Positions 26,498 through 64,000 of a DNA stretch of 64,000 nucleotides are shown piece by piece. How positions within the stretch are numbered: the stretch's first letter is position 1; each line of letters opens with the position of its first letter. The stretch lies in NCBI RefSeq assembly GCF_037042905.1, contig NC_087246.1, forward strand, positions 4,216,001 to 4,280,000. Reading direction: 5' to 3'. The notes beneath the pieces were generated by a model. It ran no database searches. It saw nothing but the letters and a program-made list of their open reading frames with translations, and had not been told where the DNA came from. The translations under genes were made by a program, and so were the position numbers. The DNA is from Lytechinus pictus. Taxonomy: Eukaryota.

Positions 26498-26662
26498 CAG
26501 GGTCACATTGCATAAAAATTGATAATAACTTTGCCATGCAAAGGAATCATGGAATCCTTGATTTTGATTGGCTGTTTAGCCATGTTACTATAGCTCCATG
26601 GTGGTAGTTACCATTGGTTGGCAAAGTTACCATAATAGTAACTTTTATTCAACGGGTCCCAG
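26498..26662. mobile_element. Degenerate short MITE related to 3895-4036
   Basis: Imperfect TIRs CAGGGTCACATTGCATAAAA ... TTTTATTCAACGGGTCCCAG, with an internal inverted TAACTTTGCCA/TGGCAAAGTTA. Confidence 0.55.
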
Positions 26663-29351: not shown

Positions 29352-29635
29352 AATGATGATAAATAAATGATAAATGATAAATCCATAATTTATTGTTCGA
29401 AAATAGACATGAAATGAAATACTCCGAAAATTTGCTTTGCCCAATTGATCGTGGGCCCGGCAGCCGCTGTGCAGCGCCAGATCGACGAGGCTCTATCCCT
29501 TTAATCGTTGAACGCCAAACAGGGTAGCAGCAACTCCCATCTTTTAACGTCTTTTGGTCTGACGCGGCCGGGGTTTAAACCCCCGACCTCCCGGTTGTGA
29601 GACGGACGCTCTACCAACTGAGCCAACACACCGGT
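29352..29635 (-). mobile_element. tRNA-derived SINE, copy 2 (same family as 2725-3009)
   Basis: Minus strand ACCGGTGTGTTGGCTCAGTTGGTAGAGCGTCCGTCTCACAACCGGGAGGTCGGGGGTTTAAACCCC head, a body shared with copy 1, and a (TTTATCA)n tail. Confidence 0.85.
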
Positions 29636-37852: not shown

Positions 37853-37982
37853 TGTGTGAACGCGATTGAACTATGGAAACTGAGATTGTTGACTGTGTGT
37901 GAACGCGATTGAACTATGGAAACTGAGATTGTTGACTGTGTGTGAACGCGATTGAACTATGGAAACTGAGATTGTTGACTGT
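37853..37982. repeat. Minisatellite, 43-bp unit x3
   Basis: TGTGTGAACGCGATTGAACTATGGAAACTGAGATTGTTGACTG repeated head-to-tail; CGCGATT at 37861, 37904 and 37947. Confidence 0.95.
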
Positions 37983-43919: not shown

Positions 43920-45784
43920 TATGAACTCATTTTCTTTTATTATTAATATCTATGGTAAATCAATAGTATTTGCCGAACAACATTCTCCCTTTCCTTCTCC
44001 TTGAAAAAACACACACACACACAAACCATTTACCGGGAAATACAAATCATTATACCACGTCATATGCATTTGTATTGCATTTTCCCTTGGTTTAATTACA
44101 GTTGAAACCTGAAAAAGAAATAGACAAAATGAACGACTGGCATGTCTACATCATATACAGAAGTGATAACTGAAATGAACAGACGTCTTCATTGGTCTAA
44201 TAATTTGTTTACCTTACGTATAATTGGTCATCACAACTCTTTAATGCCCTTTTTGTCTCCTTGTTTCTAGAGCTGCTGTTGCATGTCTATGGTCTATATT
44301 ATGTTTGTTCCACTTTATATGTTTGTCATTTTGCCTACGACGAAGATTCTGCTAGGATCGAAAGCTTAGGCCCCTTTTGACTCTCAATGAGTTACAATCA
44401 TACAGCAATGCAATGTCATTATGATAATTTATATAAAGACACAGATGGGGTGGACTATTAAAAGTTGGGGAAAACTATTAAAAAAGTTCAAAATTGAGAG
44501 TTTTGCATTTCAAAATGTAAGTATGAACAGGTTACCTTATCCCATTTTGTGAAATCTTATCCATTAATATTTAATAATTAGAAGAGTATAAAGCACGTTC
44601 AGTAGACTAGCTTGCTACCTGTGATAAAACACAAACATTGAGAGTGCGTGGGATCGCAGTCACTTTGGCCGATCGTGTCAAAGGTCAGAGATTTTCGTTC
44701 TACACCGAGGCAGTGTTTACCGCCAAGACATGGGGGAGTTTCAAGCCTAGTCATTTCAAGACATACAACAATTCAGCATGTCTACAGCGTTTATATTTCT
44801 GAGCTAAAAGCATTTATTGATAATGTAAGATATTTATGAGATCGTAAATAATCAGATTAAATAATTAACTTTGATAATTTCGTTAAAATAGAAAATGCAT
44901 GCTTGAGCATTCGCATACAAAGGGCCAGGGCACAGTATCGTCTTGGATTTAGCATATTCCAAGTCCACAAAACTGGTCATTTACATTAATATTATCATCG
45001 TGTTAGGATGATAAAACCCTCGAATGACCAGTCAATAATGTTCATAATAACAAGTTAGTTTCACAGGTACAGAAATTCGTTGAAGTGAGGTTATGCTACA
45101 GCTAGGGCCTATATACCATGTACATTCACGATTGTTATCAACCCAATGTACAAGTGACCCATAGGCCTACGTACAGTGTTCCACGGCATTTTATAATTCT
45201 AAAATCAGCTACAAACTTGGCCAACAACTGAAAATGCAATAGTGTGTACTATTCCAAAACCAAAGTTCATTTATATATTCAGTTCAAAGTACTTTAAAGC
45301 TCACCCTTTGAATCATGACTTCTTGCACACTATAATCAATTATCATTTCGTCACTCCCAGATACGACTGCATGCGGGATACGACATTATCATTAAATCGT
45401 ACTTTTCGGAGGGAAAATACATTTATTTCGTAAGGAAGAAAGCTCAAACGGAGAATGGGGGAATATTGACAGCTATGACAGTTGTCACTCAAACGAATTT
45501 CTTTTGTTTGTGGAGAGGATGATGAGTTCAACATTCAGACCAAATGAGGGTAAGTGAGTATAATGACAATATCACACGTTCAACATCATGGCCTAACAAC
45601 GGGTTAAAGTGGAGAAAAAGGCAGAGGAGAGGAGCAAGAGATGGAGGGATTAAAGAGTACGTGTGTGGGGTGAGTGGGGGAGGGTGGGGAGAGAGGGAGA
45701 GACGAGGGGGCAAGCGAAATAAAACAAAAGTGATAAAAATGTAATAGGCCCATGCACTAGGAAAATTTGAATGCTTATTTGGAT

Positions 45785-45820
45785 CATGGACCTACTAGTA
45801 TACTCTGTCAGAGTAGTATG
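45785..45820. mobile_element. Degenerate 36-bp mini-element, TSD 6/7
   Basis: TTTGGAT|CATGGACCTACTAGTATACTCTGTCAGAGTAGTATG|TTTGGAG. Confidence 0.45.
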
Positions 45821-45935
45821 TTTGGAGCAAGTGAAGAGAAGCGGAGACGGAGAGGAATGGGGGGGGGGGGGGGGGTAGAGAGAAACAGAGAAAGGGGAGA
45901 GAGAGAACGCCAGAGTGCACTATCGACGGAGTTAA

Positions 45936-46504
45936 AGGGGTACTCTAGGCTGAAAATAATATGATTTGAACAGACTGATTAACAATCAGACGAACAAAAC
46001 ACTTTACCTTTGCTAAAAATGTTTTGCATTATTCCGGTCAAAAACAGTTTTCATGAATATTCAATGAGCAAATTGATGATGTCATATCCCCAATTGTTCT
46101 CTTTTATTTTATTACACAAAAATTGGATTTATTCAATTTTTTCCTCCACGAACTTAAAATAAATGGATTGACACCTGACTTAGTGCATTGCATTAGATAT
46201 TTATTGCTGCAAATTCATGTAATTTTAAGGGAGACACATCAGTCATACATTGTAAGAAATAATGAAACAAATATGATTTCATATAATGCATAAGCAAAAG
46301 GAAAGTGGGGGATATGACATAATCAGCCCACCTAATGAATATTTATGACGACATGCATAATAACTGTTTTTTGAAAAAATATTGATAAACTTTCAAATTC
46401 AATAACTTCGTTAGTTATCAGATTTTGATAAAATTTTCAGCATTTTGCTCTGTGAATTTTTTCTGTTTATTTAGATATAAGTATTTTCAGCGCGTAGTAC
46501 CCCT
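45936..46504. mobile_element. Kolobok-type non-autonomous DNA transposon, family B
   Basis: TTAA|AGGGGTACTCTAGGCTGAAAATA ... TATTTTCAGCGCGTAGTACCCCT|TTAA. Confidence 0.8.
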
Positions 46505-46508
46505 TTAA

Positions 46509-47100
46509 AGGTCAAGTCCACCCCAGGAAAATGCTGACTCGAATAAATAGAGAAAAATCAAACTAGCATAGTGCTGAAAATTTCATTAAGATCGGATGTA
46601 AAATAAGAAAGTTGTGACATTTTAAAGATTCGCTTATTTTTCACAAAACAGTAATATGCACAACTAGGTGAGTCAGTCGATGATGTCTATCACTCACTAA
46701 TTCTTTTGTGTTTTATTGTTTGAATTATACAATATTTCATTTTTTTATAGATTTGACAATATGGACCAACTTTACTGAACCATATAGTATTAAACAATGC
46801 TAATTTCACATGTTCAGGGAGGAATTAATCGTTGTATCACTTGACAATGAGGAGAAAATTAGACTATTTCATATTTCATATAATAAAATACAAAAGAAAT
46901 AGTGAGTGGATGACGTCATAGTCTCCTCATTTGCATACCAGCCAGGATGTGCATATAACTGTTTTGTGAAATTAAGCGAAACTTTAAAATGTCATAACTT
47001 TCTTATTTTACATCCAATTTTGATGAATTTTTCAGTGTTATGCTTGTTGGACTTTTCTCTTTTTATTCAAATCAACTATTTGTTGGGGTGGACTTGTCCT
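46509..47100. mobile_element. Kolobok-type non-autonomous DNA transposon, family A
   Basis: TTAA|AGGTCAAGTCCACCCC ... GGGGTGGACTTGTCCT|TTAA, collinear with 20071-20639. Confidence 0.9.
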
Positions 47101-47182
47101 TTAATGAGCATGACAACGAGAGAATCGGGTCGATATTAAAAAAATATATATTTAAGTGACAAAATAATAATGTGTGTGTGTG

Positions 47183-47203
47183 CATGGACCTAATTTGTCC
47201 ATG
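47183..47203. mobile_element. 21-bp mini-element with 7-bp TSD (1 mismatch)
   Basis: GTGTGTG|CATGGACCTAATTTGTCCATG|GTCTGTG. Confidence 0.65.
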
Positions 47204-47450
47204 GTCTGTGTGAGGGTGTGTTTGTATGTGTGGGATAGTGGGGTATACACCGTCATTATGAGGATGTTTTAATTTCTCCAGAAGATAAAATGAATGCAGA
47301 TGGGGACCGAATCCATCAATCGCAAAGTCATCAGTTTCCTCTGAAGGACACAGTGGAACGATCATTAAAAATGACAAAACCACGGACGATTCCCTTCCAT
47401 TAGGCATTGTATGACAGTCACGTTTTTTGGACTTGGATAGGTCCTTTTAC

Positions 47451-47474
47451 CATGGACCTATTAATAGGTCCATG
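47451..47474. mobile_element. 24-bp perfect palindrome with 7-bp TSD (P-superfamily footprint/mini-element)
   Basis: CTTTTAC|CATGGACCTATTAATAGGTCCATG|CTTTTAC. Confidence 0.8.
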
Positions 47475-50400
47475 CTTTTACCCAGGGTCTGCCATGACCG
47501 TCCAAACGGGATGGGCGAAGGTTTACATCTCCAATTCGTATTGCGCAAAAGTTATCAGCCCTTTTAAAACAAAATGGTAAACAAATTTGAGTTGCAGTAA
47601 ATTCACTTAGAGAAGATTGTAACCCCCCCAGAAAATATATATATATATTATGAATTTCACTCAAATTGAATAATAAAAATACAAATCTCCCCCGCAGAGA
47701 GCAGAAAATGTCTATAATTCATGTCCTAAGATTTTCAAGATTTCGATCCAGTAAACGATAAGGTTGAACAGCTGCTGGTGTTGAAACATGTAATGACATT
47801 TTCCTCTTCATCATACGTGAATTTTATCACCTCCATTTTGAAAAAAAAGCTTAAATTTTTCATCAGCGATTGTTTCTCTGGTCATATAAAGTGAAATCTG
47901 AGAAGGACACTTACATCGTTTCAGCTTTTATAGAGGTCAAGCAACTTGGAGGAAAGGTCATGTCAGGCAGAACCCACATTCTAAAAAGCTAGGCTGCGTC
48001 CGAAGAGTAGCATTTTCAATCATTTATTTCATCGAACGTCCATAACTTTCAAATAGCACAAAGAGGGAAACTATGCAAATGTTAAGATGAAGACGTTCCA
48101 TGCATATAAAAACATATTTTAATTTCATAACAATCATTAGAGGGAAAAATAGCGAACGAAATTTCAGAAAAACGCAATTTTTTAATGATTAATAATGTTT
48201 CGAAAAGAAAGTGCATAAATTCATCTCTGCAAGAAATGACAAAAAACGGAAGGTACTGAAGCTCTAATACAGCTCAGGTCCCGATCAGTATCGAAGACTA
48301 CAGTATTCGCTGACGTTTACTTCGGAACCAATGAGAGAGAAATACCCTTGGTTATGATGTATACCTTACCTATTATGATCACTTTTTTCTTTAATATTTC
48401 TCATAGACTAGTGTAAAATCAATATATTACTTATAAAAGATGCAACCTTTAACCTCAAGAGAAGCACAGATTTTGAACGACATATTCGTGAACAGTACCG
48501 TCATCATGAAGAAAATACTTTCAAAGATATCTATCTGGTTTGAGTTTACTGCGTAACATGTGTTTCTCATTTCAAGGGGCATGCATCTGTACATTCACCC
48601 TCTTCTTCTCCTCCCACCCTCACTTCCCCCATCCCCCACGCCAAAACACAATTGACAAATGGGATGTAATCTAAAAGAAAACCCCAAAGAAATGTTGAAT
48701 GTTTTCGAAATAAAAAAATAAGCCTACGAATATCAAAGGATGAGTTTTCTAGGATATAGTCCTATTTCATAAGTAAATTGTTGAAAATGATTTTTGAAAT
48801 GGAGGAAATAGAGATGGGGGGTATCCTAACCCCCTAATAACCAGAGAAAGTATATATATATGTGATGGCTCTTTAGTTTAGGTGGTAGAAAATGATACGA
48901 TAAATTGGAAAGATATTTTGAAAGCATTTTGGTAAGCTTGTTATCATAATTATATACACCGGTATATAGCTCAATCATAATTCATGAGGGAATCAAATAT
49001 AGGCCTACGCCATTAAATTGTATGTATTTTTGTCACAGTTGAAAAATCCATGTAGGCTACATTTTCGAACAACACCGTCTATTCTTCTAGACTATCCTCA
49101 TAACTTATACCTATGCACGTTCTTCAAATCGGCTGGGGTCTCCCTGACTCAGCTTTGCCCCGGCCGTTACCCCGTGGGAGGAAGTCAGTTCTTGTAAGCC
49201 GGTGCGGAATAGCGGAATAGGTGCTTGTACCGAGGAAGTATAATAAATGCTGGGGGATTTGGCTCAAAATTTGGAGGAAGAGGTCTAGCGATTGTATGAT
49301 TTAATATTTTTATTATTTTTTACTCCCTCAGAGGTTCTAGGGAAGGAAATATCGTTGTAAGAGCAGTTTATGAATTATTGATGGGAAAATATTTCCAACA
49401 ACAATAATTGAACGATAGTTTGGGGGGAGGGGTCTTTCTCTTTCACAGACAATGCGTGAGGGAATGTTAGTGTACATCGAAGTGTAATACTTGAAACTGA
49501 CTTTATATACATTACATACAGGTCGTTTGAAAACATCAATATAACCTACATTATTTCGAACTTACACACCAATAAAAAGATGTTCACATCACAGATTACG
49601 TTGTGTTATCAGGCCAAATACTTTCAAGATATTCTTATAACAACAACCATCCACTGCATGGTTATGCATTAAACATTAAATAAACATATTAAGGATGCTC
49701 ACATCAATAATAATTATTTTCAAGATATACTTTCCCAATACTTTCAAGACATTTCAAGATATTTTGTAATGGAAATGTGAATTTCATAATTATCTCAACA
49801 GTGACTAAAGAATACAACTTGTGAATCAAATTGTGATAAACCCCAGAAACATTCCAAGGGCATAACTGTACCAAGGTATCAACGAATACAAACCCCAAAA
49901 CTAACAAACACAATACTTTCGATTATGAACTTCCACCATGCAGTGATCATGCATGGATGACGTCATGAAGTTCAAGTTAGGGTTGACTATAAGGGGTCTA
50001 TGACTTCCATATCCTGGCTAGGAAATTGACCCGTGTAAGGGATTAACTGCTATTGTTGAGGGCTTGAATTATCTTACATGTGGATTTTTTTCAAATGAAA
50101 ATTTAAATCATAGAATATTTGTGTTTTTATCATGCAGGACATGAGTTTTATTTTAGCAATATCAATCACAACTCATGATTCCATCATGCCAATAGTCTCA
50201 ATTCAAAATTAGTTTCTAGTTTCAACAAGATGATTACAGCTCAGGTCGAAAGGCCTTTATAGGCATAGCACATGTAGCTTTAATGAAAGATATATAAGAA
50301 CATTCAATTTCCTTGTTAATTTATTTTGGCAAACTTTTTAGCCACCATAAGCTACTTCATTAACTTAGATTTTACAAATCAATGTAACTAAAATCAAGTC

Positions 50401-52387
50401 TTGAACTCAACAAAATGGTAGTATATTGTATAGGCCTACATTTCTCTCTCTTTCCTTTAAAGTGTAGGTTGAAGAGACTGCATTGTCCATGGCAGCTTCG
50501 AAGTCTCTGAAAAGTGTGTTTAGTTGGCATGCTATGTTATCGAAAAGTCAGACTAATGCGTTGTTATCAAAACATTCTAATTATTTCTACAAGAATGTAT
50601 GCATAAACTAAATCATATCTCAAGATGTGTCATCTGTTTATTATTGAAATACATCGATGTCATTGTTAACATATTATACCTTTATTTAGATTACAACAAT
50701 ATCACATAATATCATATTTATTTTGCAACGATTTTAACAAAACAAAAACGAAATGTTCGTGTTTCAGAACAGAAAACTAAAAAAAGGCTTAAACACCGTT
50801 AAGAAACAACATTCAAATTGATTTCACATTCGTTTCGAATGAATAGCAATTGTTATTTAAAATCAATTAATTGACTTCTTTCACACCAAACGACTGATTA
50901 ACGCCAATAACGAAATCATCAAGATGGTAACGACTTTATTAATATTTACAATCTGTCCATGAAGACTTAGACACCTTCTATCAAATAAAGTGTCTGAATT
51001 ATCTCTAACCAATTAAGCCCCATTAGATAATGAGAATATAAGTCACAACTTATTACACAGATATGTAGATCAATGACGATTCACATTGCCCGTGCACGCT
51101 GCACGCACGGACATAGGGAAACTCGCCCGGTCGCCCAGCACTGTGGCCGTGCATTACACTCGTGTAATGTACGTTGCCCTTGGTTGAGGAATACTTGGGA
51201 GAGAGGTCGTATATAAACATTGGAGGTCACATTCCTCCTGATCTTGGGTGTCATATTACGTCTTGGTCGTAACCTCTGCTATAGTCTTCTCTACTAGTAG
51301 GCAAGGTTAGTGAGGAAAATAAAGGAAAAGAGAATGTCTAGAATAGGGGCCATAAAAAAAGTGATTTTCGCAGTTCAGGTTGCCGGGCACACTACCATTG
51401 TCATTGTCTGCCCACATTTGTGATGTATTTAAAAAACTTATTCTTAGTCTTTATACAGAACTTAACAATAATTAAAAAACAAAATACAAATAGGATACAT
51501 TTACATTGTTTCCAATATTCATCTATATCATATAACATTCGTTCGAGTATGACCGTTTCAAAAAACAATCCTTACTTTATCATAAAAAGTACAAAACCCA
51601 TCTTCGTAACAACAACAACAACAACAAATTTCCCTCGAAGTCAGACCAATATCATGATAACCAAATCACTTGATGCCTTGAGAACAACGACGAATTATGA
51701 TGTTACTCAGGCTATTATTGATGATGATGAGTATGATGATGGTGATGATGGTGATGATGATGTAATTCTCTTTATGCATAATGTTATTGATTTCCAGGAA
51801 TACGATCTTAATTACTATGTCATTGGCAGTCTATCTAAGTATTTAAGTTATGATAATACTGTCACGACAAAGTAATGAATGGTAAATAAAGGCCTAATTG
51901 CGGAATAACGCTAATTATCATCAATATTAATACATTTTCCATACCTCTTAATACCACACCTTTCCTATTGCCTATATAGCATGAATCATTATTGTTGAAT
52001 ACTTGAATGCAATGAAAAAAACTCAAAAATTAGTCTTCAATTCAATTTATTGTACTATCAACTCAGATACAACATTCACAATAATTTACACCAAGGTTCC
52101 CTACAGACATACAGAGTAAGATTTTGATTCATATGTTGTCTCATAATTACATTATTATGTAAAATATTAATGTGGTGGATTGTATACCGGAAAATATGAA
52201 ATTGAAATATTACAGCATTGTTCTACGGAATTGGGGGAGATATTGTTTTGGAGAATATAGGCCTAGGCCTATACATTTCATACTTCAGTCTATTTCTCTT
52301 ATGAGAACAAAATGATGATAGGTCAATTGATGCTCGACCGAGCTCCACACACCCAACATAAAGATCATCCCCGCTCGTCTACCACTA

Positions 52388-52656
52388 CACCTTAAAACAT
52401 ATTGGGTGAAAAATCTGAAAATGCCCCATGAGGGTAATTATGTGTTCAACCAACATTGGGCTATTCTTCTGTTTGGGCATTTTTATTTATCCAATGTGAT
52501 GAAAATTTTGCCCATACTTAATTGCTGTTTATTTTCTTAACCTTACTGGACAATATGCTTCCCACATTGGGTAAAATACTGCCCCAAATTGGTTGGACAT
52601 AATATTCATATTACCCTAGTGCTGGTTAAATTTTACCCAATATTTTTTTTACAGTG
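52388..52656. mobile_element. Fold-back MITE with CAC..GTG termini and TA flanks
   Basis: TA|CACCTTAAAACATATTGGGT ... ACCCAATATTTTTTTTACAGTG|TA, with repeated internal TTGGG/CCCAA motifs in inverted arrangement. Confidence 0.7.
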
Positions 52657-53635
52657 TACAAGGTAAACCAACGATGTCGACATATTTAACAAGCTCAACA
52701 ATCAACTGGCTCACCAGCTATGCAATAAATGCACAAGGCATACGATCTGAGAAAAGCCTGAGTCGTGCTACCCGTATACGATCATGTGGACCTTATTAGA
52801 ATTTGTTCTAGATCGTGGACCGATATGACTCCTGAGACTGTTGTACTCGGCTATACATGGCTTGATGGAACATGGAAAAGAATGATATTTTATGACCAGT
52901 TTTGTATTCCAAAAATCTAAAGACTTTCCTGATATACTTGAGAGAATAGAATTATCATGGTCTACGAACGAGTTATCAAAACGGCAATTTGAAATGAGTA
53001 ATTATCATATTTCATAAGCAGCATGCTCGTGGGCAAAGTCGAACTCGTAGGCCATCCTGTGCTGGGGTCCATCAACTTGTCCCCCCCCCCTGTGATGATC
53101 AAATGAAATGTAGTCATCCTTACTCAATGTGGAAAATGTATTTCAACCTGATAAAATTTGATCTCATCTCGCACAAGTACGGGCCTTTTCTTTAAACTTT
53201 CACCACCATGTTCACTATAAAAGTTTTGAGTCATGGCCGGTTGGCTCGGTTAAGTTTTAAACTTGTTATACCAACACTACCCCCTCCCCCCAAAAAACAA
53301 CAACAACGTAACCTGAAATGAGGGATATGGGAGTGAATGATTTTATTTTTAAATAATACTTTGTAAGATGTTTTATTGTAATGTTTTTTTTAAAGGTGAA
53401 TGCATTGTAATCAAGTTCCTTCATCCTACTACTCTCTCCACTGTAGAAAAAGAAACCATGTAGAATGCAGAAACACATGTTTCATGTTGATTTATTATGG
53501 TTTCACGCCGAGTATTGCCGCTCACATCATGGGGTATTGATCACAGAGCATGCCGCTCAAAGTGCCTCTGGCTATACATGTATCATACAGTGTCTTTACA
53601 CACAACAACCATCTCACATTACTAACTGGTATAAT

Positions 53636-53659
53636 CATGCACCTATCTGTAGGTCTATG
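53636..53659. mobile_element. Degenerate 24-bp mini-element, TSD 5/7
   Basis: GTATAAT|CATGCACCTATCTGTAGGTCTATG|GTATAGC. Confidence 0.5.
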
Positions 53660-56617
53660 GTATAGCCTAATTGGCATTTACTTTAAAGATACACTCACAG
53701 AGCTTGTCTGTGGCTCAGTAAGGTAAATTATGTTGGATGTTGCAATTCATTCCTTAAATAATTTGGGAGTTTATCAATTTCAGACATTTAACATCCCCAA
53801 GATTAATATTTCATACGTGGAGAGTCATCATGTATGAAGTCATAAACATCAGACATGGCGTTCCACAGAAACTAAATAAAATTAATTCCATTCTCCTTGC
53901 TCGTTTTGTATCCATTAAGTCCTATATTTTTATAGGCTACCTTTTCGTTTCAGCTTCCTTCTCCTTAGAGCTTGTTTTCATTCCAAGATGCAAATAGAAA
54001 AATAATTATCTTTCTTCCAAGAACATGTAGTCATTTTGGCTCATTTCTCCCCCACCATGAACGCATGTGTCATTCTATTTCGAATGATTCTTAACACGAT
54101 TAACGTTTTTTCTCCCCATTCTGAAAGTCTTCCCCTCAAATTTCCCTTCTGCAATATTTTTACGTCGAAGACCCTTCCCCATGGACCTCTGACTCTTCCC
54201 ATTTTGTCTCTTTTCTTGTATGTCATTTACGTTGTTACCCAAAATTGTGACAAGGACCATAACATACCACCGCGCCACCGGGATCGAGTCCCGGAGCGTC
54301 CCCATGAGCTGAGCCAGACAAAATGTATAAAATAATACCCAATGTTTGCAGTGATATTGTTCAAACCCATTATAGACTCTGTCAGCCTTTCCAAGCAGTA
54401 ATTGCAACAATGACTAATGTGCTACATTAAAACGGAATGTTGGAATAACGACAGAATTCCAATGTGACTTGTCCTCTTTCTTAAAAAAAAATATATATCT
54501 AAAAATTGACATTTATGTAAGGTGCCAAACACTATCTAATCCCAATGGATGTGTGCTGGATTCGGATGCCTTTGAAATCTTTTTAAAAATCTGAAAAGAC
54601 TTCTGATCATTCATAATAACTTGGGAATTTACATGAATGAGGGTAAAAATAGAACTAAGAAAGAAGAAAGTATAAAACTATATTCTTATCCAGTGTCAAT
54701 GTGTTTATATAAAAATAATTTTGTTAAGATATGGGCCATAGTTGAGGTAACAATATATAACACGATTTTACATCTGTTATGAGATTACATGAGATTACAT
54801 TCATAATCATACATTAAATGTATGAACCTTCGAATGTTTTTCTTTTTATAGCAAAGTTTGTAGTGATTTTAGAACACAATAAAATTATCAAACGAGGAAA
54901 TTTGTATGTCCAAATAAATACATAATTCAACCACGGGAAATTTTATATCTTTGCCCGTTTTAGATGGATCTTTCTCTAGTTTGATCTCATTCAATCACAT
55001 TTTTACATGATCAGCCAATTTGAAATCAAATACAAATACAGTCATGCATGCAGTATATACTTCATAAATTTAGGATTATATTCTCTTTATTTGTAGTCAA
55101 CTGGTTCACGATGATCTTTGAGCATGCATTTTTGCTATTTTATTATCTAGACCTAATATTATCTATCCTATTTCATTCAAAGTAATGCAAAGCAATCAAT
55201 TTTCAAGCCATTTCAACCATTGCATCAGGGCAACTCATAACTCCGTACAGCACAACGCGTAGCATTTCGCACTGCAAAATATTCCTCGCGCCGACGAATA
55301 AGATGAACATGATCATGACGAGATTTTCTATAATAAACAGCAGAAATCAATGTTATGAATTGTTATACGTTAAATGAGTGTTACTTTAATATATCTTTAG
55401 AAACTTACCGTTTTCCCAACAGCTTTTGGCAAATATGGATGACATAGCTTCAAGCTAGGTTGTAGCCTCCTGCTGAGCAGATACAAACAAAGTAGAATTC
55501 AAAATGGCGGCGCCCATGAGAGTAAACTGGAAGTGATCAGAGGTCATTTGACGACATTAGTCAACAGAAAGCGTTGAAGATTGAATTTTGGATTGTTTTG
55601 TAGTTTGCATATCTTTCAGAAAATTTTCATATTCTACTTTCCATGGATATATAGATGAAGACTAGAAATTTATAACGAAAAAACGGTAAAGATTGCGACA
55701 CAACGGTTTTCATTTTCGAATGAATGTCAACCCCTTGAAACGCGGTGAAGGGTCAACCTTACCCTATCCGAAGTACGACCTGCGAGCTACCGCTTTCTAT
55801 TAAGGGTATAATTTTAAAGTAGACACACAACCATGCCGTTGGGCACACAATTTTAACTTTCTATAAACGCTCATTATCTTTACTCGATAGTCAGGAGAAT
55901 ATAGAACCTATGCTTGTTTCATAACTTCCATCAAGTTTTGAATGGAACACGTCAAACCTGTTTAAAATATTAATTTAACTGAGATGAAGTTTGTCATGAA
56001 TATTGGAGAGTCCCGGGTGGAGAGTACACTCACCGATAACCTAGCCTCCAATATCTTGAGTATACATTGGATTTAGACGGAAATACAGGAGGCTCTCAAT
56101 AGTCAGTGTTGCTCTTTAACTACGACTTTATTGTAGTTCGGAAATACACAAGTGCCCCCACCAAACGTCTTGGTATAGTTTGAACTATAATGTGAGCCGA
56201 ATTGTTATTTTAAACGCTGAGAAAGAATGCCATGGTAAGATCGCCTTACACATTTGGAAACATAAGACCATAAATTAGACAAGATAGAAATTGAGCAGCG
56301 GTGACACTTTTCTCTCCTTGAGGGCAAAAGTACAATTAAGCCAGACGTTAAGACCCTCGTGGAACATTTTAATGTGTTTGCCAGATATTTTCTGATCGAC
56401 GACGAAAATAAAAGTTTTGGGTGGTTTCGAATAATTGCAATGGTCTCGGGTTTTTATTGCTCACCTAACTTTATTCGTTTCCTCATTTAGAAAATATTCG
56501 GCATATCCATGATGGGCTTCCATGTGTTTCGGTATGTACATACGTTACATCAATTTGTATGATGTGGAATGAAAAAAAATATTATAGTGTTATCTATTGC
56601 ATCAAAGTTTTTTATTT

Positions 56618-56790
56618 TCATTGTCATCATCTCGTCATCATTGTCTTCAACACTTTCTTCTTCAACGTCATCATCATAATCGTCAGCATCACCACCAACA
56701 TTACCACCGCGCCATCACCTCCACCAGCATCATCACCTTTATCATTGACAGTATCGTCGTCATCACTGTCTCACATCATCCTCATCGTTG
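56618..56790. repeat. Degenerate (TCA/CCA)n low-complexity tract
   Basis: Triplet periodicity TCA/TCG/CCA, which explains the His-rich and Ser/Ile-rich spurious ORFs. Confidence 0.75.
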
Positions 56791-56964
56791 TCAGTGCAGA
56801 TTATATCCCGTTTCCAAGCCAATATCATTCAATTGTTTGCAAGCCCTTCTAAATGGCGATTTTCACGCCAACATATTCAAGTAATATACTTTATAATTCC
56901 AACTATCTTTTAAATGAATGAATCGGAAAATACGAAATATTATAAGAACAGTCTAAACTTCCAT

Positions 56965-56998
56965 CATGGAGCTGCTACTACTCTGTGTTAGCTCCATG
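56965..56998. mobile_element. 34-bp mini-element with 9-bp TIR and 7-bp TSD (second TIR variant)
   Basis: CTTCCAT|CATGGAGCTGCTACTACTCTGTGTTAGCTCCATG|CTTCCAT. Confidence 0.75.
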
Positions 56999-57352
56999 CT
57001 TCCATCATATGAACACAATAAACCCTTTTCATTTCCAAATATTTTATATTCTACGTTCATCCTAAAACAGGTTTGATTTTACGACGAATACCTGGATATT
57101 TACTTGATCTGGAATGTATTATGTCATCAACTTTCAATCTCTGGAAGAAACCCCCTTTCAATGGCTTCCTGTCCAGCCTGATTTTCTTCCAAGAGTTCTG
57201 AAATCCCTAGGATTAGCTGCCATACTGCAAGAAAACACATAATTTTATAACCAGCAAAATGAGATGTTCAGATTCATTTGATGTTGTTTTACGTCATAAT
57301 TCTGTTTACGAGTGGCAAAATGAATAAACTATTATTACAAGAATGTACAGTG

Positions 57353-57427
57353 AAAGAGATAGAAAGAGAGAGAGAGAGAGAGAGGAAGAGAGAGAATGTG
57401 AGAATGGGGAGGGAGAGGGAGTGAGGG
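57353..57427. repeat. GA-rich polypurine tract upstream of the Tbx promoter
   Basis: (GA)n and GGGA runs. Confidence 0.8.
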
Positions 57428-57611
57428 ATTAGGGTTTGTTGAACTTGGACCGTTTGTCTTCCTCTGGGGTTGCCCTCCATGATGAGAAAGCCAGAGGATC
57501 CCCCATAACGGAGATGAAATGAACAGGAGTCGAACGACCAAATACCCAGACATATGATTCTGACTCGTGATCGAAAGAAAAAGAGGGAGGGAGGGAGGCG
57601 GTTGGGTGGGG

Positions 57612-57631
57612 CATGGACCTATAGGTCCATG
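57612..57631. mobile_element. 20-bp perfect palindrome with 7-bp TSD (P-superfamily footprint/mini-element)
   Basis: GGTGGGG|CATGGACCTATAGGTCCATG|GGTGGGG. Confidence 0.8.
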
Positions 57632-58299
57632 GGTGGGGGGAGGGGTGTGGGAGGGGAAGTTGGATATCAGCATTAGACCGACCGACACCCAGAAATGTGC
57701 AGTTTTGATGGAAAGGGAGTTGGGCGGTGGAGGTGAGCGGATGTATATATGAACAGGTTTGTACGGAGGGAAATGCAGGTTGATGTAGGTGAGGGGGGGG
57801 GGTAGATAAAGGGAAAGAGTTTTCAATGATAGCGAATAAAGCAGGATTAGAGAAGGTGATGGAGAAGAAAAAAAAGGAATTTGTCTCTAAAGATAAAGGT
57901 GTTAGAGTTTCTTGTGAAATATTTTTGTGTTAGAATAAACAATCAATACCTTTTCTTAAATAAAAAATCTTATATCTTTGATTTCCTTTTCATTACACGT
58001 ATGTAAATATTCGATATCATCAAAAAGTCTTTTTGTATGGGTAATTTTCATTTGTCCCCTTTTGTTGTCATTTATGTACTAATTGAGTAGTCCAGTTTTC
58101 AACTTTTGTTACTTCACGTCAATCTCAATACGTTGGCAGGATGAAAAAAACTCAGTGACTACAATGAGAGAGAGAATATGATGATATTTATTATTTTTCT
58201 TCTGGGTGAGATTGATGTTACCCTCCTATTCCTATTTTGCCTACTCGGGGCTACTCATGCATTCATCTGCATAATTAGTCAAATGATTTGGTTGTCGAC

Positions 58300-58420
58300 A
58301 ACCAATTATTTACGAGCACGGTTGCATAATTTACCGACGTCGCCTCTATCTGGTGCCGGAGCAATGCTTTACCAACCAATCAGAGACGACATACCTGTAG
58401 CACGTACTAGTCGCTGAGTT
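58300..58420 (+). promoter_or_regulatory. Probable core promoter region of the Tbx gene
   Basis: CpG-rich, non-repetitive stretch ~700 bp upstream of the ATG with ACCAATCAG (CCAAT box at 58376-58380). No canonical TATA. TSS position is inferred. Confidence 0.4.
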
Positions 58421-59093
58421 CAACCCTGGAAAAGAGGCGGGGGTGCAGAGATAAATAACACAAACTTTGGTCCCATTTGTGGATGAAGTTAGCAACTGAC
58501 ATTGTGACTGCTGACTATGACGGTAGATGAAAGTGATCGAAGGGAGGAGAGCTAAGAAAAAAAAAGAGTTGAAGGGACCTATCATTGCAACACTTGTGCG
58601 ATAATCTCAAAACAACGCTGCAGATAGAGAGATCTTGCCCGAGACTTGGGGCTAGATTTTTCGGCACATCACTTCTTTGAAAGATCTCATGGTGGTGAGA
58701 CCTTAATACTTTTCACTCTCTGGAAACGACATTGTCATACATAAAATCTATGCGAGCTCATTTTACCTCCATACAACAGGACATGTGGAACTGGAAGACC
58801 TTTTTAGTTTTTCAAACTTGCGTTTTAGTTTGCAGTTTCTATTACTATTAGTTTTTCTTGGCGTGGGATTTAATCTTAGCCTGTTGAGTCGTCATTTACG
58901 GATTCTAACGCGCAAAATATATCTGTCTGTGCGATCTTTTAATTCACCCTGCGGATTCCCTATCGTCTGCTTCATTATTACGTATCCCATAATATCGACA
59001 GTCTAGGAAGTTATAAAGTGTTTAAAATCGGGTAAATTTGATCTCGAATTTATCCGATCTCACCGAAAAAGTCGGCTTTTTCTTTGGCTGGCT

Positions 59094-59325
59094 ATGGATA
59101 TTACGAGCCATACGGCGGACCCACTTTCTCCGAGGGCTAACGCATTCAGCATCGCTTCACTTATCTCGCCGAGCGACAGGGAAGGTGACGAGGACGAGCT
59201 GACCGCCGGGACTGGCGGCGTGGTATGTCAGGACAGTTCCGTTGCGTCTCTTCAAGCCTTGCACGAGGTACAGAACGGAAACGATTGGGGATTAAGATAC
59301 AACAACGATTATCACAGCATGGAAG
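59094..59325 (+). CDS. Tbx1: First coding exon of a T-box transcription factor, Tbx1 subfamily (most likely Tbx1/10); gene continues beyond the window
   Basis: ORF MDITSHTADPLSPRANAFSIASLIS...DYHSME in a GC-richer island. It contains the eh1 motif FSIASLI in the LSPRANAFSI context typical of Tbx1/10, Tbx20 and Tbx15/18/22 N-termini. From memory, PLSPRAxAFSIASL and an exon ending in ME followed by a phase-1 intron best match Tbx1. Donor ATGGAAG|GTAAAA at 59325/59326. No T-box exon is in the window, so the paralogue call rests on recalled N-terminal similarity. Confidence 0.75.
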
Positions 59326-62300
59326 GTAAAATCCAATTATATTTATGAACATGTTCTAGATATTATTTTGGTTATTACTGTAAAATATAGCCAATGTCAT
59401 GGATATATGATCTGTTTCATTGTCGCTTTGATTGTCCAGTTTGTACACTCTTGCTTCACTGTGAATCGCATAATTTCAATTCAGTCTTGGAATATATGGT
59501 TGCTGCATATTATGTCACAATTGAATAAAAACAATAATTTTGTTACTTCGCAAAAGCCCCATGTACAGAAGGGGATAGTAGTCATTTAGTAGTATCTATG
59601 CTGGTACATGTACTGTAGTAACTAATGCCTTGACCCATACTCTTGAGACTTGAGTCTTGAGTATGAATAATATCACTCTCGCTATTTCACCATGTCACAA
59701 TTTCTGTTTGGACAGAATATGTTAATATGGAAGAAATGTTATGTGTTATTTGATTTCATGGTATCATGACCTAGTAATACTTCAGGGAATGGACTTCTCC
59801 AGCTATTCCCAACCAATTTATTCTCCCTAAAATACATATCCATCTCCAGGGTGCTTCAAATATTCGTGCAGGCACTGCACTCCGAACCCGTTCACCAGCC
59901 CTCCCCCTCCCCATTCTCTCATAAATATGTCGATAGTAGCACGAAGCACATTTGTTTATACATCAACGTGCGTGAGTTCTCATTCGGTAGCTACCCCATA
60001 TAGTTTTATCTTCCAAACCTACAGCAATTCATACATGCTTACATGAGCATCAGAAATATATCAAAGTGGTAAAGAGGACGAATCAGGAATAAAGAGGGAG
60101 AGAGGAATGACATCAAAAAGATAATGTTTTGTAGACGACTCGTGTGATTTATATTGTATAAAGTAGAGACATGATGAGTAGTATGTCTGTCGTGATGATC
60201 ATTATACTTGATGAGAGAAAACTCAGAAAATCTACCGAAACACGTCTGTATGACTGTATTGTTTTCGTACATTTTCAATCTTCTCTCATTGTTCTTTTGG
60301 TTGTATTGTCACCATGCAGATAAAATATTGGCATATAGAAGGCCTATATAGAATGAAAATATATCCGGGAGGCGGGAAATCTCTTTAAAATGATGTAGCC
60401 TCCTCATTTGCGAGGAAAATAATATTGAAGTACGTTTTATTCAGGGTTATAATAATCCTAGTCTTGTTCCTGTATTAGTCGCATTGTATAAAAAAAGATT
60501 TCTTGCTCCTTAGAACAATTTCTACGACTGAGTACATAGGCCTTCATAGCTAGGCTTATTCGTGAAAGACAATAGGCTTGATATTGTCGAAATCTATAAA
60601 TCATTTTCAAACCTTAATTCAAATCTCTAGATCAGTGCATCAATGTGTAATTTTCGAATCAGTATTGCGGCGATCGAAAAATTCAGCTTGAAGATCATAT
60701 CCCTGATAGTTAACGTTGTCGATTGTTTTAGCATAGTATCCAGTGTTGTACTCTTTATATATCATACTCATGAAACACCCAATTTTTGGTGACAAACCAA
60801 CACAATATCAGCTACATGAAGCCGTAATGAATTTAAAAGGAAACCTAATCTGATTGACGCACTGCATATTCCACTCCACTTTACCTCCACTTCTGATAAT
60901 GTTAAAATGATTGTTACTTCTTTTATTGCTAAAACTTTTATTTAACTAAGACAGACAACTTCTGTTGCATATTAATAATGAAGAAAGAAGATGATGAAAT
61001 TTCATAGAAATCACAACAACGTTTAAAAGTTTAACATTTACCATTCAAAGACAAATGACTCAGTGATGTAGTCTATGTATTCAATCATTTAATATTTTCA
61101 AGATTAATAAAGATTATCATTCATTATTTTCGAAACGTGGAATTTTATAGAACGTTTTTTCATGATTCACAGTTAATTGTCACGATCATGACGATGTAAG
61201 TACTAATTGCTCTAACATAGTGCCATTGTAAACAAATTTAAACATAACGCATGAATTCTAAAGTTTATCCATAGGTGGGAATTGGTGTGACTGTTACGTC
61301 TTGATATGGCCAGAATTTAGTGTTACATATAAATATGATTACTAAATTAGAAGGCAACAACGAGACTTTAAAAAGCAACAAATCCACCAAGCCAAGCCAT
61401 AAATGATTTTTTTTCAAATATTGAAACAACGTGCTGTTTATACTACTCTTGAATTCATATTCTTAAATTAAAGATGAAATTAAATGTGCAATCATTCTTA
61501 ACGAGCCAATGCTAAGGCGGAGTGAAAAAAAATCAAGGCATTTTGATATGTAATAATGCCAAGGTGCAAAATATACCCCTGTTAACGACTGGAATCCCTA
61601 GCCGAGCTACCCCGTTGGTCGGTTCCAATGATCCCCTATAGAGGACGTGGGCAGGTACATTCTCAACCTTGATCATGCGGGCTACACAAACACGCCAGAT
61701 GTATTTCCATTTCTCGAGGATTTGCAGGTCAACTGAACCAAAGCCCCCCCCCCCCCTTTCCTTCCCCATCCTCCTGCACATCTGCCACATTTCATGCTTT
61801 CTTTTACTCCATTTTGAATTTATTTTTATAATGTTCGCCACTGAATAGTATTTCAATTTCTTTTCATAATCTGATAATTGGGCATACCGGCTTGTGTTAT
61901 TGTCCCTTTCACTTTTGTTTCTATTATAACTCTCCTCCTCTTACACCATCATAAGGTTGTTAAGGGAACTTAAGACTTCAAAAGAACTTACATGATCCAT
62001 ATTAAATATGTAGGCCTTTGTCGAATTTAATTTCATATATTTCATTTTTGTGTACGTATATTATGTTGTCTGCATCCGACTATCCTCTTTCTCCTCCCCC
62101 ACAGTTTTCTCCAAACTTATCCATTCTTATCCATTTGTCCAATCCGTTTCCATGTTTTCTCATTATTATTATTTTTACCTCATTTGTCTTTCTCTTACAT
62201 TTCCTCTATTTTCTCTTCACTTTCTCCCCCCCCCGATACACCCTTCCCATTATATTTGCGTCACTCAGAGCTCCCCACCCTATACCCCCACCCCCTCTGC

Positions 62301-62931
62301 TGCCCGGATCCCCAACCATATGGAGCATATGGGGCGAGGAATGACGTGTGTATTGTCATTTTATCAGGTCTCAACTTTTTCAAAAACACAATTCAGAGGT
62401 GAAGAGTGTTTAGTCACCAAGCGTTCAAGCCATACCGTTCTTGAGACCTCCATATTACCTCTCCATAGCCTGAACATGTCTGCATTATATTTTCAGAGAC
62501 TGGTGCGAGACATTATTTCTTATATGTCAAACATTGGTGATAAAAGATGTTGCTAAGTTTGTACATTAAATAAACGAAAGAGAAAGAAATGAGTTCCATA
62601 CGCAGTAATACAAAAATAACCATACGTCGATATATCATTGAACTACAAACTATCTGTGAAATAAACAAATAACTGTGATATAAAAGCAGATGAATGACCG
62701 ATTCCATTTTCACTGATCAGCTGATTGCGAAATACCATCAATTATTGATGGTTAGCTGAAAACAAAAAGTTTTTCACTGAAGTGGTATTGTAATTTCATA
62801 GATTTGATACACCAATGAATAGGCCTTAGTGATGCTGATGCTATATAGAATTTGCACACTTTTCAGGAAGAATTTTGCATATCTGCATTTGAAATTGCTT
62901 TTGTCAGTTCATGAAGCTATCGTTGTGAGAC

Positions 62932-62956
62932 CATGGACCTATAAGAATGGTCCATG
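62932..62956. mobile_element. 25-bp mini-element with 7-bp TSD (1 mismatch)
   Basis: GTGAGAC|CATGGACCTATAAGAATGGTCCATG|GTTAGAC. Confidence 0.7.
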
Positions 62957-62980
62957 GTTAGACACAGAAGGGAGTATAAA

Positions 62981-63000
62981 CATGTTGTTATAGGTCCATG
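62981..63000. mobile_element. 20-bp asymmetric mini-element with perfect 7-bp TSD
   Basis: GTATAAA|CATGTTGTTATAGGTCCATG|GTATAAA. Confidence 0.7.
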
Positions 63001-64000
63001 GTATAAAGTAGTCTCATTTTGTTTGCGAAACTGTTGATACGTCAAAGTGGGTGTTGTTTTCTAGGAGACGGTTAAAAATATGATGCAAATAGTTTTTACT
63101 CATTATTTGTGAATGTATCGACCTATATATTATGCGTGTGTATACAGGCATATATAAGTTTTTGTACACGGTAATTCATTTCTTTACATGCAACTATTAA
63201 AGTATAGTTATTTTGAATGAATCGAATACATTAGATATGAAGGTAAATGGGAATGGAGAGCTTTATTATGACTCATAAGCTAACTTTGAAAAACACGTTA
63301 CTATCTTGGTAATACTTGCATGAAAATTACATTATTTTATGATTGCCTTGTTATCTTTAAAAACATATATCAAGGCTTGATACATTACCCAAATTAGCAT
63401 TTTATTACCTTTTAGTTTATATACTTTTTTAAGATTAAGCAACCGTAATTCATTGATTGAGTTGAATCAGTTGTATTGTCAAATGTATCATGAAATATCA
63501 GAATTCCGAATATATTGAAAAAAAAATATTGAAGTAGTTCATCAAGTCACAATTATTACGGCAGCATTTTCTAGTTTTGAATGTTGATTGAAACACTCGG
63601 TAGGTGTAACGTTCCATCACAGCTGTCATTTATTTCACATATCAATGCTACATGGAATTAACAAGTAATCAGAAAATAAGGATATTTCTGTGAAGGGTAG
63701 AGAGTCAACGACCTAATAAGTAGGCGAAAGAGGTTAAATATTGCCATAATGAGACGACTTTTCCCCCTTCTCTCTGAATTTGAAATGTATAAATCCCTAG
63801 CAGAGATTACCATTGCTGTGTGGGGAGATTTTCTCCTGTTAGTCATTGGAATGAGTGGGAGTGATCCTGTCATTTATATTAGCTCAAAAATGAAGGGAAA
63901 ATGGATGAAGTACTATAATTATGACGGGACGTGTAGATTTTCTCACGATATAATTCTTATTAATTGACTGATCTTCTTTGACAGTTTCCCCCCCGAAAAT

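What the first reader, a model, noticed from the sequence alone, without database searches (positions are those of the whole stretch)
45778..63007. Family of tiny CATGGA..TCCATG palindromes, each with its own 7-bp target-site duplication: probable P-element-superfamily excision scars
Seen: at least 8 elements of only 20-36 bp (45785, 47183, 47451, 53636, 56965, 57612, 62932, 62981) share CATGGACCTA/TAGGTCCATG-type ends but have variable centres. Each is flanked by a different 7-bp direct repeat, four of them perfect (CTTTTAC, CTTCCAT, GGTGGGG, GTATAAA). Established: P-superfamily transposons have CA..TG termini and 7-8 bp TSDs. Drosophila P transposase cuts with long (17-nt) staggered overhangs, so end-joining leaves short pieces of both TIRs between the duplicated target. 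Inference: these are too short and too heterogeneous to be ordinary MITEs. They look like fixed germline excision footprints, a fossil record of P-type insertion-and-excision cycles that repeat annotators miss.
Basis: partly seen in the sequence, partly recalled or inferred. Interest (0 to 1): 0.8.

Follow-up and report, generated by a model that had tools for sequence, protein, structure and literature searches.

The report
Fossil scars of excised P-type transposons
Eight tiny palindromes in this window are most likely the repair scars left when a P-element-like jumping gene cut itself out again and again, and a related genome holds many more, so such scars record past transposon movement and show how far apart the enzyme cuts the two strands.

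Summary
Eight 20-36 bp CATG...CATG palindromes lie between 45778 and 63007. Each has its own 7-bp direct repeat: four perfect, three with one mismatch, one with two. Simulated sequence gives 0.01 perfect cases.

A scan of metagenome contigs found the same termini at 75 or more distinct sites in another, unidentified animal host.
- Most of those sites have perfect 8-bp duplications.
- Lengths peak at 42 and 40 bp, with a ladder of centre-deleted forms down to 20 bp.
- Each side keeps at most 22 nt of the terminal repeat.
- Junctions usually show 0-4 nt of microhomology, and some carry filler.
- The target motif is a palindromic GTNNNNAC.

This is the architecture of laboratory P-element excision products, with a 22-nt rather than 17-nt stagger.

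That host also encodes a P-type transposase (THAP, RNase H-like and GTP-binding insertion domains) 139 bp from one such palindrome. It has a multi-copy longer element that begins with the same terminus.

Two things are not shown. No complete element with both CATGGACCTA ends around a transposase was found, and no empty orthologous site was available. This is a new member of a known kind and moderately interesting.

The parts
45778..45827 (.). Complex scar: TTTGGAT + 36-bp CATGGACCTACTAGTATACTCTGTCAGAGTAGTATG + TTTGGAG. About 24 nt of one transposon end, followed by a snap-back hairpin (TACTCTG-T-CAGAGTA).
   Evidence: It shares the 8-mer TACTCTGT with element 56965 at a similar distance from the tip (read directly from the sequence). 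The 7-bp repeat matches at 6 of 7 positions.
47176..47210 (.). Scar: GTGTGTG + 21-bp CATGGACCTAATTTGTCCATG + GTCTGTG, inserted in a (GT)n tract.
   Evidence: The repeat matches at 6 of 7 positions.
47444..47481 (.). Scar: CTTTTAC + 24-bp perfect palindrome CATGGACCTATTAATAGGTCCATG + CTTTTAC.
   Evidence: The 7-bp repeat is perfect.
53629..53666 (.). Older, mutated scar: GTATAAT + 24-bp CATGCACCTATCTGTAGGTCTATG + GTATAGC.
   Evidence: The termini each have one mismatch, and the repeat matches at 5 of 7 positions.
56958..57005 (.). Scar of a sister subfamily (CATGGAGCT ends): CTTCCAT + 34 bp + CTTCCAT. It reads as about 23 nt of one end plus 11 nt of the other.
   Evidence: The 7-bp repeat is perfect.
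57605..57638 (.). Scar: GGTGGGG + 20-bp CATGGACCTATAGGTCCATG + GGTGGGG. Two 12-nt end pieces are joined on a 4-nt TATA microhomology.
   Evidence: The identical 20-mer recurs at 3 independent sites in the related host.
62925..62963 (.). Scar: GTGAGAC + 25-bp CATGGACCTATAAGAATGGTCCATG + GTTAGAC. It reads as about 17 nt plus 8 nt of the two ends.
   Evidence: The repeat matches at 6 of 7 positions.
62974..63007 (.). Scar: GTATAAA + 20-bp CATGTTGTTATAGGTCCATG + GTATAAA. It reads as 4 nt plus 16 nt of the two ends, and lies only 24 bp from the previous scar.
   Evidence: The 7-bp repeat is perfect and is strictly 7 bp here.
26582..26601 (.). Possible ninth, degenerate scar: CATGTTACTATAGCTCCATG. 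It has the same 4+16 layout as 62981 but no recognisable duplication.

Best explanation
The tiny palindromes are germline excision footprints of a cut-and-paste DNA transposon, most probably of the P superfamily (P/THAP9, Galileo, 1360).

1. The element inserted and duplicated 7 bp of target. This is shown by the flanking repeats.
2. Its transposase later excised it. It cut one strand at the transposon tip and the other strand well inside the terminal repeat, so each donor flank kept a 3' single-stranded tail made of transposon-end sequence. This is inferred from the sharp 22-nt cap per side in the related family, and from at least 17 nt, probably 22-24 nt, kept here.
3. The two tails are identical rather than complementary. 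They were joined by microhomology-mediated (alternative) end joining, with variable trimming, occasional filler and snap-back synthesis. This gives TSD + left piece + right piece + TSD, with a different centre at each site. Junction statistics in the relative show this. In the window, 57612 is a clean TATA-microhomology product and 45785 is a snap-back product.
4. The scars are neutral and were inherited. Mismatches in some repeats show they differ in age.
5. The clustering (8 in 17 kb, including pairs 49, 268 and 647 bp apart) is best explained by repeated local hopping of a resident element, a known P-element habit. This step is inferred.

The scars themselves have no function.
For: **Window**
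- Strong excess over chance.
- All eight centres differ.
- Outer target dinucleotides are GT or AC at 6 of 16 half-sites, against a 5% background (P = 1e-4). All eight elements fall within a 17.2-kb span, P = 4e-4.

**Related family, metagenome scan**
- 51 of 71 sites have perfect 8-bp TSDs.
- Lengths peak at 42 bp (29 sites) and 40 bp (11 sites). Almost nothing lies between 43 and 50 bp, although the pattern allowed it.
- Of 150 end pieces, 56 are exactly 22 nt. None is unambiguously longer.
- Junction overlap is 0-4 nt at 61 sites and there is filler at 14.
- The recurrent short products (24 and 20 bp) are the ones with 4-nt microhomology.
- The symmetrised target motif is G-N-C-N-[GTNNNNAC]-N-G-N-C.
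- Eight further palindrome-plus-8-bp-TSD structures with other termini occur in the same loci, against 0.2 expected.

**Link to the P superfamily**
- L077 (also recovered as L121) carries a gene with a THAP exon, PF21787 (4.7e-30) and PF21788 (7.5e-12). Its start codon lies 139 bp from a 42-bp palindrome.
- Its homologues are named 'Transposable element P transposase'.
- Intact relatives L126 and L127 have 8-bp TSDs and terminal repeats sharing a TATAAATAGA block with this family.
- A multi-copy longer element starts with the same 22-nt terminus (L049, L128, L129).

**Literature**
- 17-nt stagger, 8-bp TSD and local transposition of P (PMC7776569).
- Laboratory footprints with the same architecture (PMC2895639).
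- Galileo has 7-bp, sometimes 8-bp, TSDs with consensus GTANTAC (PMC4168063).
Against: - No complete element with CATGGACCTA at both ends and a transposase inside was recovered, either in the window or in the fetched loci.
- In L077 and L049 the 42-bp palindrome has non-matching flanking 8-mers. In L077 it sits where the element's left end should be, and I cannot fully explain that.
- No empty orthologous or paralogous site was available. An ORF across scar 57612 found no homologues.
- The window's genome could not be searched, so the 7-bp family here is linked to the well-sampled 8-bp family only through 13 shared terminal nucleotides.
- 26 identical 42-mers at different sites would also be expected of a small mobile element.
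- GT....AC 8-bp targets are also typical of hAT elements (my own knowledge), so the target motif alone does not identify the superfamily.
Confidence: 0.8

Rival explanations
1. They are true 'nano-MITEs'. The 20-42 bp palindromes would themselves be mobilised in trans by a transposase and amplified, and the variants would be decayed copies.
For: In the related host, 26 sites carry the identical 42-mer and 7 the identical 40-mer. Only one solitary long-element end was seen in 395 kb, against about 100 short palindromes. All have target-site duplications, as insertions would.
Against: - In the window no two elements share a centre.
- In the relative, 46 of 75 sites are not 42 bp long although point divergence is almost nil. 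The variants were therefore made when the structure formed, not by later decay.
- Variants are junction-centred, often asymmetric (12+20, 13+21, 22+13), carry filler, and track microhomology length. These are end-joining signatures.
- Identical products are expected from deterministic joining of identical tails.
- P elements need internal transposase-binding sites outside the terminal repeats (PMC7776569). Pairing two ends only 20-42 bp apart is also sterically implausible (inference).
Confidence: 0.08
2. They are scars or deletion derivatives of a transposon from another superfamily that makes 7-8 bp duplications (hAT, Dada or an undescribed one), not P.
For: No transposase was found between matching termini. 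The GT....AC 8-bp target motif is shared with hAT elements (my own knowledge). The solitary end in L049 is followed by an ORF with a weak Myb-like match (E = 0.0035), not by a THAP domain.
Against: - hAT, Transib and Mutator excision forms hairpins on the flanking DNA. It leaves altered flanks with no transposon-end nucleotides (established knowledge; PMC5499845 title). Here both duplications are intact and up to 22 nt of each end remain.
- The termini are CAT..., as in P and Pdre2, not the CAG/TAG of hAT.
- A P-type transposase gene lies 139 bp from one palindrome.
- The terminal repeat shares a 10-nt block with intact P-type elements.
- The L049 ORF family is frameshifted and degenerate, so it is probably non-coding interior sequence.
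Confidence: 0.1
3. They are chance palindromes, or a library or assembly artefact such as untrimmed palindromic linkers.
For: Palindromic linkers are known contaminants of some mate-pair assemblies (my own knowledge).
Against: - Chance expectation is 0.01-0.3 against 4-6 observed.
- The same termini occur in independent assemblies from JGI, ENA and Logan.
- The same locus carries the same scar in different samples, for example L002/L035/L078 and L047/L108/L109.
- Linkers do not create target-site duplications, target-sequence preferences or a length ladder.
Confidence: 0.02

Closest known systems
End-joining footprints of Drosophila melanogaster P-element excision (17-nt 3' tails; Beall & Rio 1997; product tables in PMC2895639)
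   Same: The layout is identical: an intact duplicated target on both sides, then a variable length of each terminal repeat, joined by short microhomology or with filler or snap-back insertions. The terminus begins CATG. Local reinsertion is also shared.
   Different: - These are fixed germline fossils in wild genomes, not laboratory events.
- The duplication here is 7 bp (8 bp in the related host).
- The retained-length cap is 22 nt in the related family rather than 17.
- The terminal sequence is unrelated beyond CATG.
Galileo and 1360 (P superfamily, Drosophila)
   Same: 7-bp, occasionally 8-bp, duplications with a palindromic GT...AC target consensus (GTANTAC; PMC4168063).
   Different: Galileo has very long foldback-like terminal repeats. 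No abundant fossil footprints have been reported for it in the papers I could search.
Zebrafish Pdre2/THAP9 and other animal P-like elements
   Same: Short terminal repeats beginning CAT (CATACCTGTCAAC), 8-bp duplications and an active THAP9-type transposase (PMC10983969). Homologues of the L077 transposase are annotated in ticks, fish, Hydra, a limpet and the sea urchin Lytechinus pictus.
   Different: The position of the staggered cut has not been reported for these relatives in the text I read. Here it can be read from the scars.
MITEs (miniature inverted-repeat elements)
   Same: They are short, have terminal inverted repeats and are flanked by target-site duplications.
   Different: MITEs are typically 50-800 bp, with a family-specific interior inherited by descent. 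These are 20-42 bp, made only of end pieces, with junction-centred heterogeneity.

Membership tests
P superfamily DNA transposons (as the source of the scars) | Target-site duplication of 7-8 bp | tested here: met
   7 bp at all eight window elements, four of them perfect. 8 bp at 51 of 71 sites in the related family.
P superfamily DNA transposons (as the source of the scars) | Palindromic target-site motif extending beyond the duplication (GT...AC type) | tested here: met
   The symmetrised motif in the relative is G-N-C-N-[GTNNNNAC]-N-G-N-C. In the window, 6 of 16 half-sites are GT or AC, P = 1e-4. This feature is not exclusive to P, since hAT targets look similar.
P superfamily DNA transposons (as the source of the scars) | Long staggered donor cleavage that leaves terminal-repeat nucleotides on the flanks (17 nt in Drosophila P) | tested here: met
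   Inferred from the scars. There is a sharp cap of 22 nt per side in the relative. In the window, end pieces reach 16-17 nt and probably 22-24 nt. The cleavage itself was not assayed.
P superfamily DNA transposons (as the source of the scars) | Transposase with THAP, RNase H-like and GTP-binding insertion domains encoded between the matching termini | tested here: inconclusive
   Such a gene exists in the related host 139 bp from a 42-bp palindrome, but it was not shown to lie between two CATGGACCTA ends. No transposase remnant was recognised in the window.
P superfamily DNA transposons (as the source of the scars) | Longer or full-length copies with the same termini in the same genome | tested here: inconclusive
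   One solitary end of a multi-copy longer element was found in the related host (L049:1643, L128:5648, L129). None was found in the 64-kb window. The window's own genome could not be searched.
MITE | Family-specific internal sequence shared by descent, with length of tens to hundreds of bp | tested here: not met
   All eight centres differ, and the elements consist only of end pieces. In the relative the variants are junction-centred deletions with almost no point divergence.
hAT / Transib / Mutator excision footprints | Hairpin formed on the flanking DNA, so scars lack transposon-end bases and alter the flanks | tested here: not met
   Both target copies are intact and are separated by transposon-end sequence.
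Tc1/mariner excision footprints | TA duplication and 2-3 nt end remnants | tested here: not met
   The duplications are 7-8 bp and non-TA, with 4-22 nt remnants.

The most novel reading that the evidence does not exclude
The 20-42 bp palindromes are not only scars but are themselves still recognised and moved by the P-type transposase. That would make them the smallest eukaryotic transposable elements known, and it would explain why identical 42-mers greatly outnumber long copies.
Probability: 0.07. Interest if true: 0.85.

Novelty: new member of a known kind. Interest (0 to 1): 0.5.

Why it matters
Repeat annotators do not see cut-and-paste excision scars, so the historical activity of DNA transposons is judged only from surviving copies.

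These data show that P-type excision leaves recognisable, heritable scars in wild animal genomes, in large numbers in at least one host.

- Each scar records one insertion-and-excision cycle.
- Their spacing reports local hopping.
- The maximum end length kept reports where the transposase cuts the second strand. That position is 22 nt in the related family, against 17 nt in Drosophila.

This gives a purely computational way to ask whether long staggered cleavage, so far shown only for the Drosophila enzyme, is general among P/THAP9-like transposases. It also allows the end-joining pathway used in the germline to be profiled from junction microhomology and filler.

Tried and rejected
- **Empty-site test by protein search.** The 163-aa ORF spanning scar 57612 was searched to find alleles lacking 27 bp. 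There were no homologues.
- **Literature search** for the terminal 10-mers found only unrelated primer hits. Searches for the sample accessions, to identify the related host, found nothing.
- **Scans of prokaryotic genome contigs and viral contigs** for the 20-nt terminus gave no hits.
- **Looking for a full element.**
  - ORFs of the window show no recognisable coding sequence or transposase remnant.
  - Contigs of six transposase homologues and two copies of the L049 element were fetched. This yielded two intact P-type elements of other families (L126, L127).
  - None of the fetched contigs had CATGGACCTA at both ends.
  - Exact look-ups of three other proteins were not on record.
- **The L049 ORF** as a possible transposase N-terminus was rejected. 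It has only a weak Myb-like match, and its homologues are short, frameshifted fragments.
- **Paralogous empty sites.** None of the scars lies inside the repeats that are duplicated within the window.
- **Species identity.** The species of the window and of the related host could not be identified. The fetched loci share no repeats with the window.
Full report
**1.

Reading the sequence at the eight stated positions shows short segments that begin CATG and end CATG. Most have CATGGACCTA / TAGGTCCATG ends, and each lies between two copies of a different 7-mer.

- The strict pattern CATGGA N5-25 TCCATG occurs 5 times, against 0.07 expected from dinucleotide-preserving shuffles.
- I counted any CATG...CATG segment of 80 bp or less flanked by a 7-bp direct repeat. 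The window has 4 perfect cases against 0.01 in second-order Markov simulations, and 6 with at most one mismatch against 0.3.
- A blind scan for any short palindrome flanked by a perfect 7-mer returns only three of these elements (0.17 expected).
- The eight lie within 17.2 kb of the 64-kb window (P = 4e-4), with neighbours 49, 268 and 647 bp apart.
- The window itself is AT-rich (35% GC) eukaryotic non-coding DNA. It has SINE and MITE copies and no recognisable protein-coding gene.

**2. Anatomy in the window**

No two centres are alike.

- The 20-mer at 57612 is CATGGACCTATA joined to its own reverse complement through a 4-nt TATA overlap.
- 62932 reads as about 17 nt of one end plus 8 nt of the other.
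- 62981 reads as 4 nt plus 16 nt. A TSD-less 20-mer at 26582 has the same 4+16 layout.
- 56965 (34 bp) belongs to a sister subfamily with CATGGAGCT ends.
- 56965 and 45785 share the 8-mer TACTCTGT 15-17 nt from the tip. At least 22-24 nt of one end were therefore retained there.
- 45785 then continues with a 7-bp snap-back hairpin.
- 53636 has mutated termini and a 5/7 repeat, so the scars differ in age.
- The outer dinucleotides of the 7-mers are GT or AC at 6 of 16 half-sites, against a background of 5% (P = 1e-4).

**3. Independent evidence from another genome**

I scanned public metagenome contigs for CATGGACCTA N0-30 TAGGTCCATG.

About 100 of these come from one group of host-associated samples (Ga0126325-35, Ga0136654, and matching ENA and Logan assemblies). 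Their contigs are animal DNA of about 44% GC and include Tc1/mariner and LINE remnants. They share no repeats with the window, so this is a different species.

After removing the same locus seen in several samples, 75 distinct sites remain.

- 51 of 71 scorable sites have a perfect 8-bp duplication.
- The commonest form, at 29 sites, is a perfect 42-bp palindrome, CATGGACCTATAAATAGAACG followed by its complement. The next, at 11 sites, is 40 bp.
- The rest form a ladder down to 20 bp in which only the centre is missing, often asymmetrically (12+20, 13+21, 22+13, 22+15).
- Almost nothing lies between 43 and 50 bp, although the pattern allowed it.

I measured the end pieces against the terminal sequence, which can be extended from a solitary end at L049:1643.

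- 56 of 150 end pieces are exactly 22 nt. None is unambiguously longer.
- Junctions overlap by 0-4 nt at 61 sites and carry filler at 14.
- The recurrent short products (24 bp at 5 sites, 20 bp at 3) are the ones with 4-nt microhomology.
- Point divergence is almost nil. The length variants therefore arose when the structures formed, not by later decay.
- The symmetrised target is G-N-C-N-[GTNNNNAC]-N-G-N-C.
- The same loci hold eight further palindrome-plus-8-bp-TSD structures with other termini, for example L038:2233, L055:1709 and L028:4739, against 0.2 expected. The phenomenon is therefore not limited to one family.

**4. Match to known chemistry**

Drosophila P transposase makes an unusually long 17-nt staggered cut, generates 8-bp duplications and reinserts preferentially nearby (PMC7776569).

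After excision the donor ends carry 17-nt non-complementary 3' tails. Their end-joining products, tabulated in PMC2895639, read: 8-bp target, up to 17 nt of CATGATGAAATAACATA, microhomology or inserted bases, up to 17 nt of the other end, 8-bp target. Apart from the cap length, that is the architecture seen here.

Other superfamilies do not fit.

- hAT, Transib and Mutator elements form hairpins on the flanks and leave no transposon bases.
- Tc1/mariner leaves 2-3 nt beside TA.
- piggyBac excises precisely.

Within the P superfamily, Galileo makes 7-bp, sometimes 8-bp, duplications with the palindromic consensus GTANTAC (PMC4168063). Zebrafish Pdre2 ends begin CAT.

**5. Link to a P-type transposase**

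One of the fetched contigs, L077 (also recovered as L121), carries a gene with several P-type features.

- Its first exon is a canonical THAP finger starting at L077:303. The domain is completed after an intron by ...AVPSLF.
- A later exon matches PF21787 (TNP-like RNase H N-terminal domain, 4.7e-30).
- The same exon matches PF21788 (GTP-binding insertion domain, 7.5e-12).

Its database relatives are annotated 'Transposable element P transposase'. They occur in ticks, fish, Hydra, a limpet, a crab and the sea urchin Lytechinus pictus.

A 42-bp palindrome ends 139 bp upstream of the start codon, about where the element's left end should be. In the intact relative L127 the end-to-THAP distance is 193 bp.

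Two intact relatives were recovered.

- L127:7298-10613 has TSD CTCTATAC.
- L126:6798-11205 has TSD CCTAGGCG.
- Their terminal repeats (CAGAGCTATATATAAATAGAGC...) share a TATAAATAGA block with CATGGACCTATAAATAGAACGC at a 2-nt offset.

A longer multi-copy element begins with the same 22-nt terminus (L049, L128, L129). Its ORF-like interior has 27 degenerate relatives.

**6. What is not shown**

- I did not recover a complete element with CATGGACCTA at both ends around a transposase.
- In L077 and L049 the palindrome is flanked by two different 8-mers. Each is of the preferred target type. This may reflect excision of a composite of two adjacent elements, but it remains unexplained.
- No empty orthologous or paralogous site could be examined.
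- The window's own genome could not be searched. Its 7-bp family is tied to the 8-bp family only by 13 shared terminal nucleotides and a common architecture.

**7. Verdict**

- Excision scars of a cut-and-paste transposon with a long staggered cut: confidence about 0.8.
- That the transposon belongs to the P superfamily: probable, about 0.7.
- The main rival, a self-mobile nano-MITE, is disfavoured by the heterogeneous, junction-centred, microhomology-linked variation. Only an excision assay or polymorphism data would exclude it.

The phenomenon is a known one, P-type excision footprints, seen here as abundant germline fossils in non-model animals, with an apparent 22-nt rather than 17-nt stagger. 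I rate it a new member of a known kind and of moderate interest (0.5). Its main value is as a computational readout of transposase cleavage geometry and of past cut-and-paste activity.

Noticed in passing
window 4355-4388: A different mini-palindrome, CACTGAATTAGATCAGTG (18 bp), lies between two perfect copies of the 8-mer ATGACACC. The expected number of such structures is 0.05 per window. It may be a scar of another transposon family.
   Followed up: partly
window 47428-47450: Just upstream of scar 47451 the flank reads GGACTTGGATAGGTCC-TTTTAC. This repeats the right-end piece ATAGGTCC and most of the target CTTTTAC. It may be the remnant of an earlier insertion-and-excision cycle at the same site.
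   Followed up: no
window 45739-45754 and 62910-62919: Isolated end-like pieces with no partner or duplication: ATGTAATAGGCCCATG, 31 bp before scar 45785, and CATGAAGCTA, 12 bp before scar 62932.
   Followed up: no
window 2778-3013 and 29401-29639: Two copies, 92-97% identical, of a tRNA-derived SINE. The window's only Rfam match is a tRNA match inside one of them (29560-29632, minus strand).
   Followed up: partly
window 20054-20656 and 46505-47105: Two copies of a roughly 600-bp foldback MITE with about 149-nt inverted arms and TTAAAGG-type ends. Scar 47183 lies 78 bp beyond the second copy.
   Followed up: no
window 37853-37982: Three perfect tandem copies of a 43-bp unit.
   Followed up: no
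   Followed up: no
L087:3934-3991: In the related host, one 42-bp palindrome is flanked by 8-mers that are reverse complements of each other (GCGACGCC / GGCGTCGC). Together they make a 58-bp perfect palindrome. This suggests fold-back repair of a one-sided break rather than a simple scar.
   Followed up: no
L077:123-164 (also L121:277-318): A 42-bp palindrome with unmatched flanking 8-mers (GTATGATC / GTGCCAAC) occupies the position where the left end of a P-type transposase gene's element is expected, 139 bp before the THAP start codon. The origin of this arrangement is unexplained.
   Followed up: partly
L127:7298-10613 and L126:6798-11205: Two apparently intact P-superfamily elements (3.3 and 4.4 kb) sit in large ENA contigs. 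They have 8-bp duplications and 19-29 nt terminal repeats starting CAGAGC. Their transposases are about 50% identical to the L077 protein.
   Followed up: partly
L038:2233-2269, L055:1709-1753, L028:4739-4774: Near-perfect palindromes of 37, 45 and 36 bp with other termini (CATGATTAAAAGATAAAG..., GTAGTATCTAATCGCGTTCCTC..., GTACAACAAGC...), each with a perfect 8-bp duplication. These are probable scars of further transposon families in the related host. The 45-mer again has 22-nt halves.
   Followed up: partly
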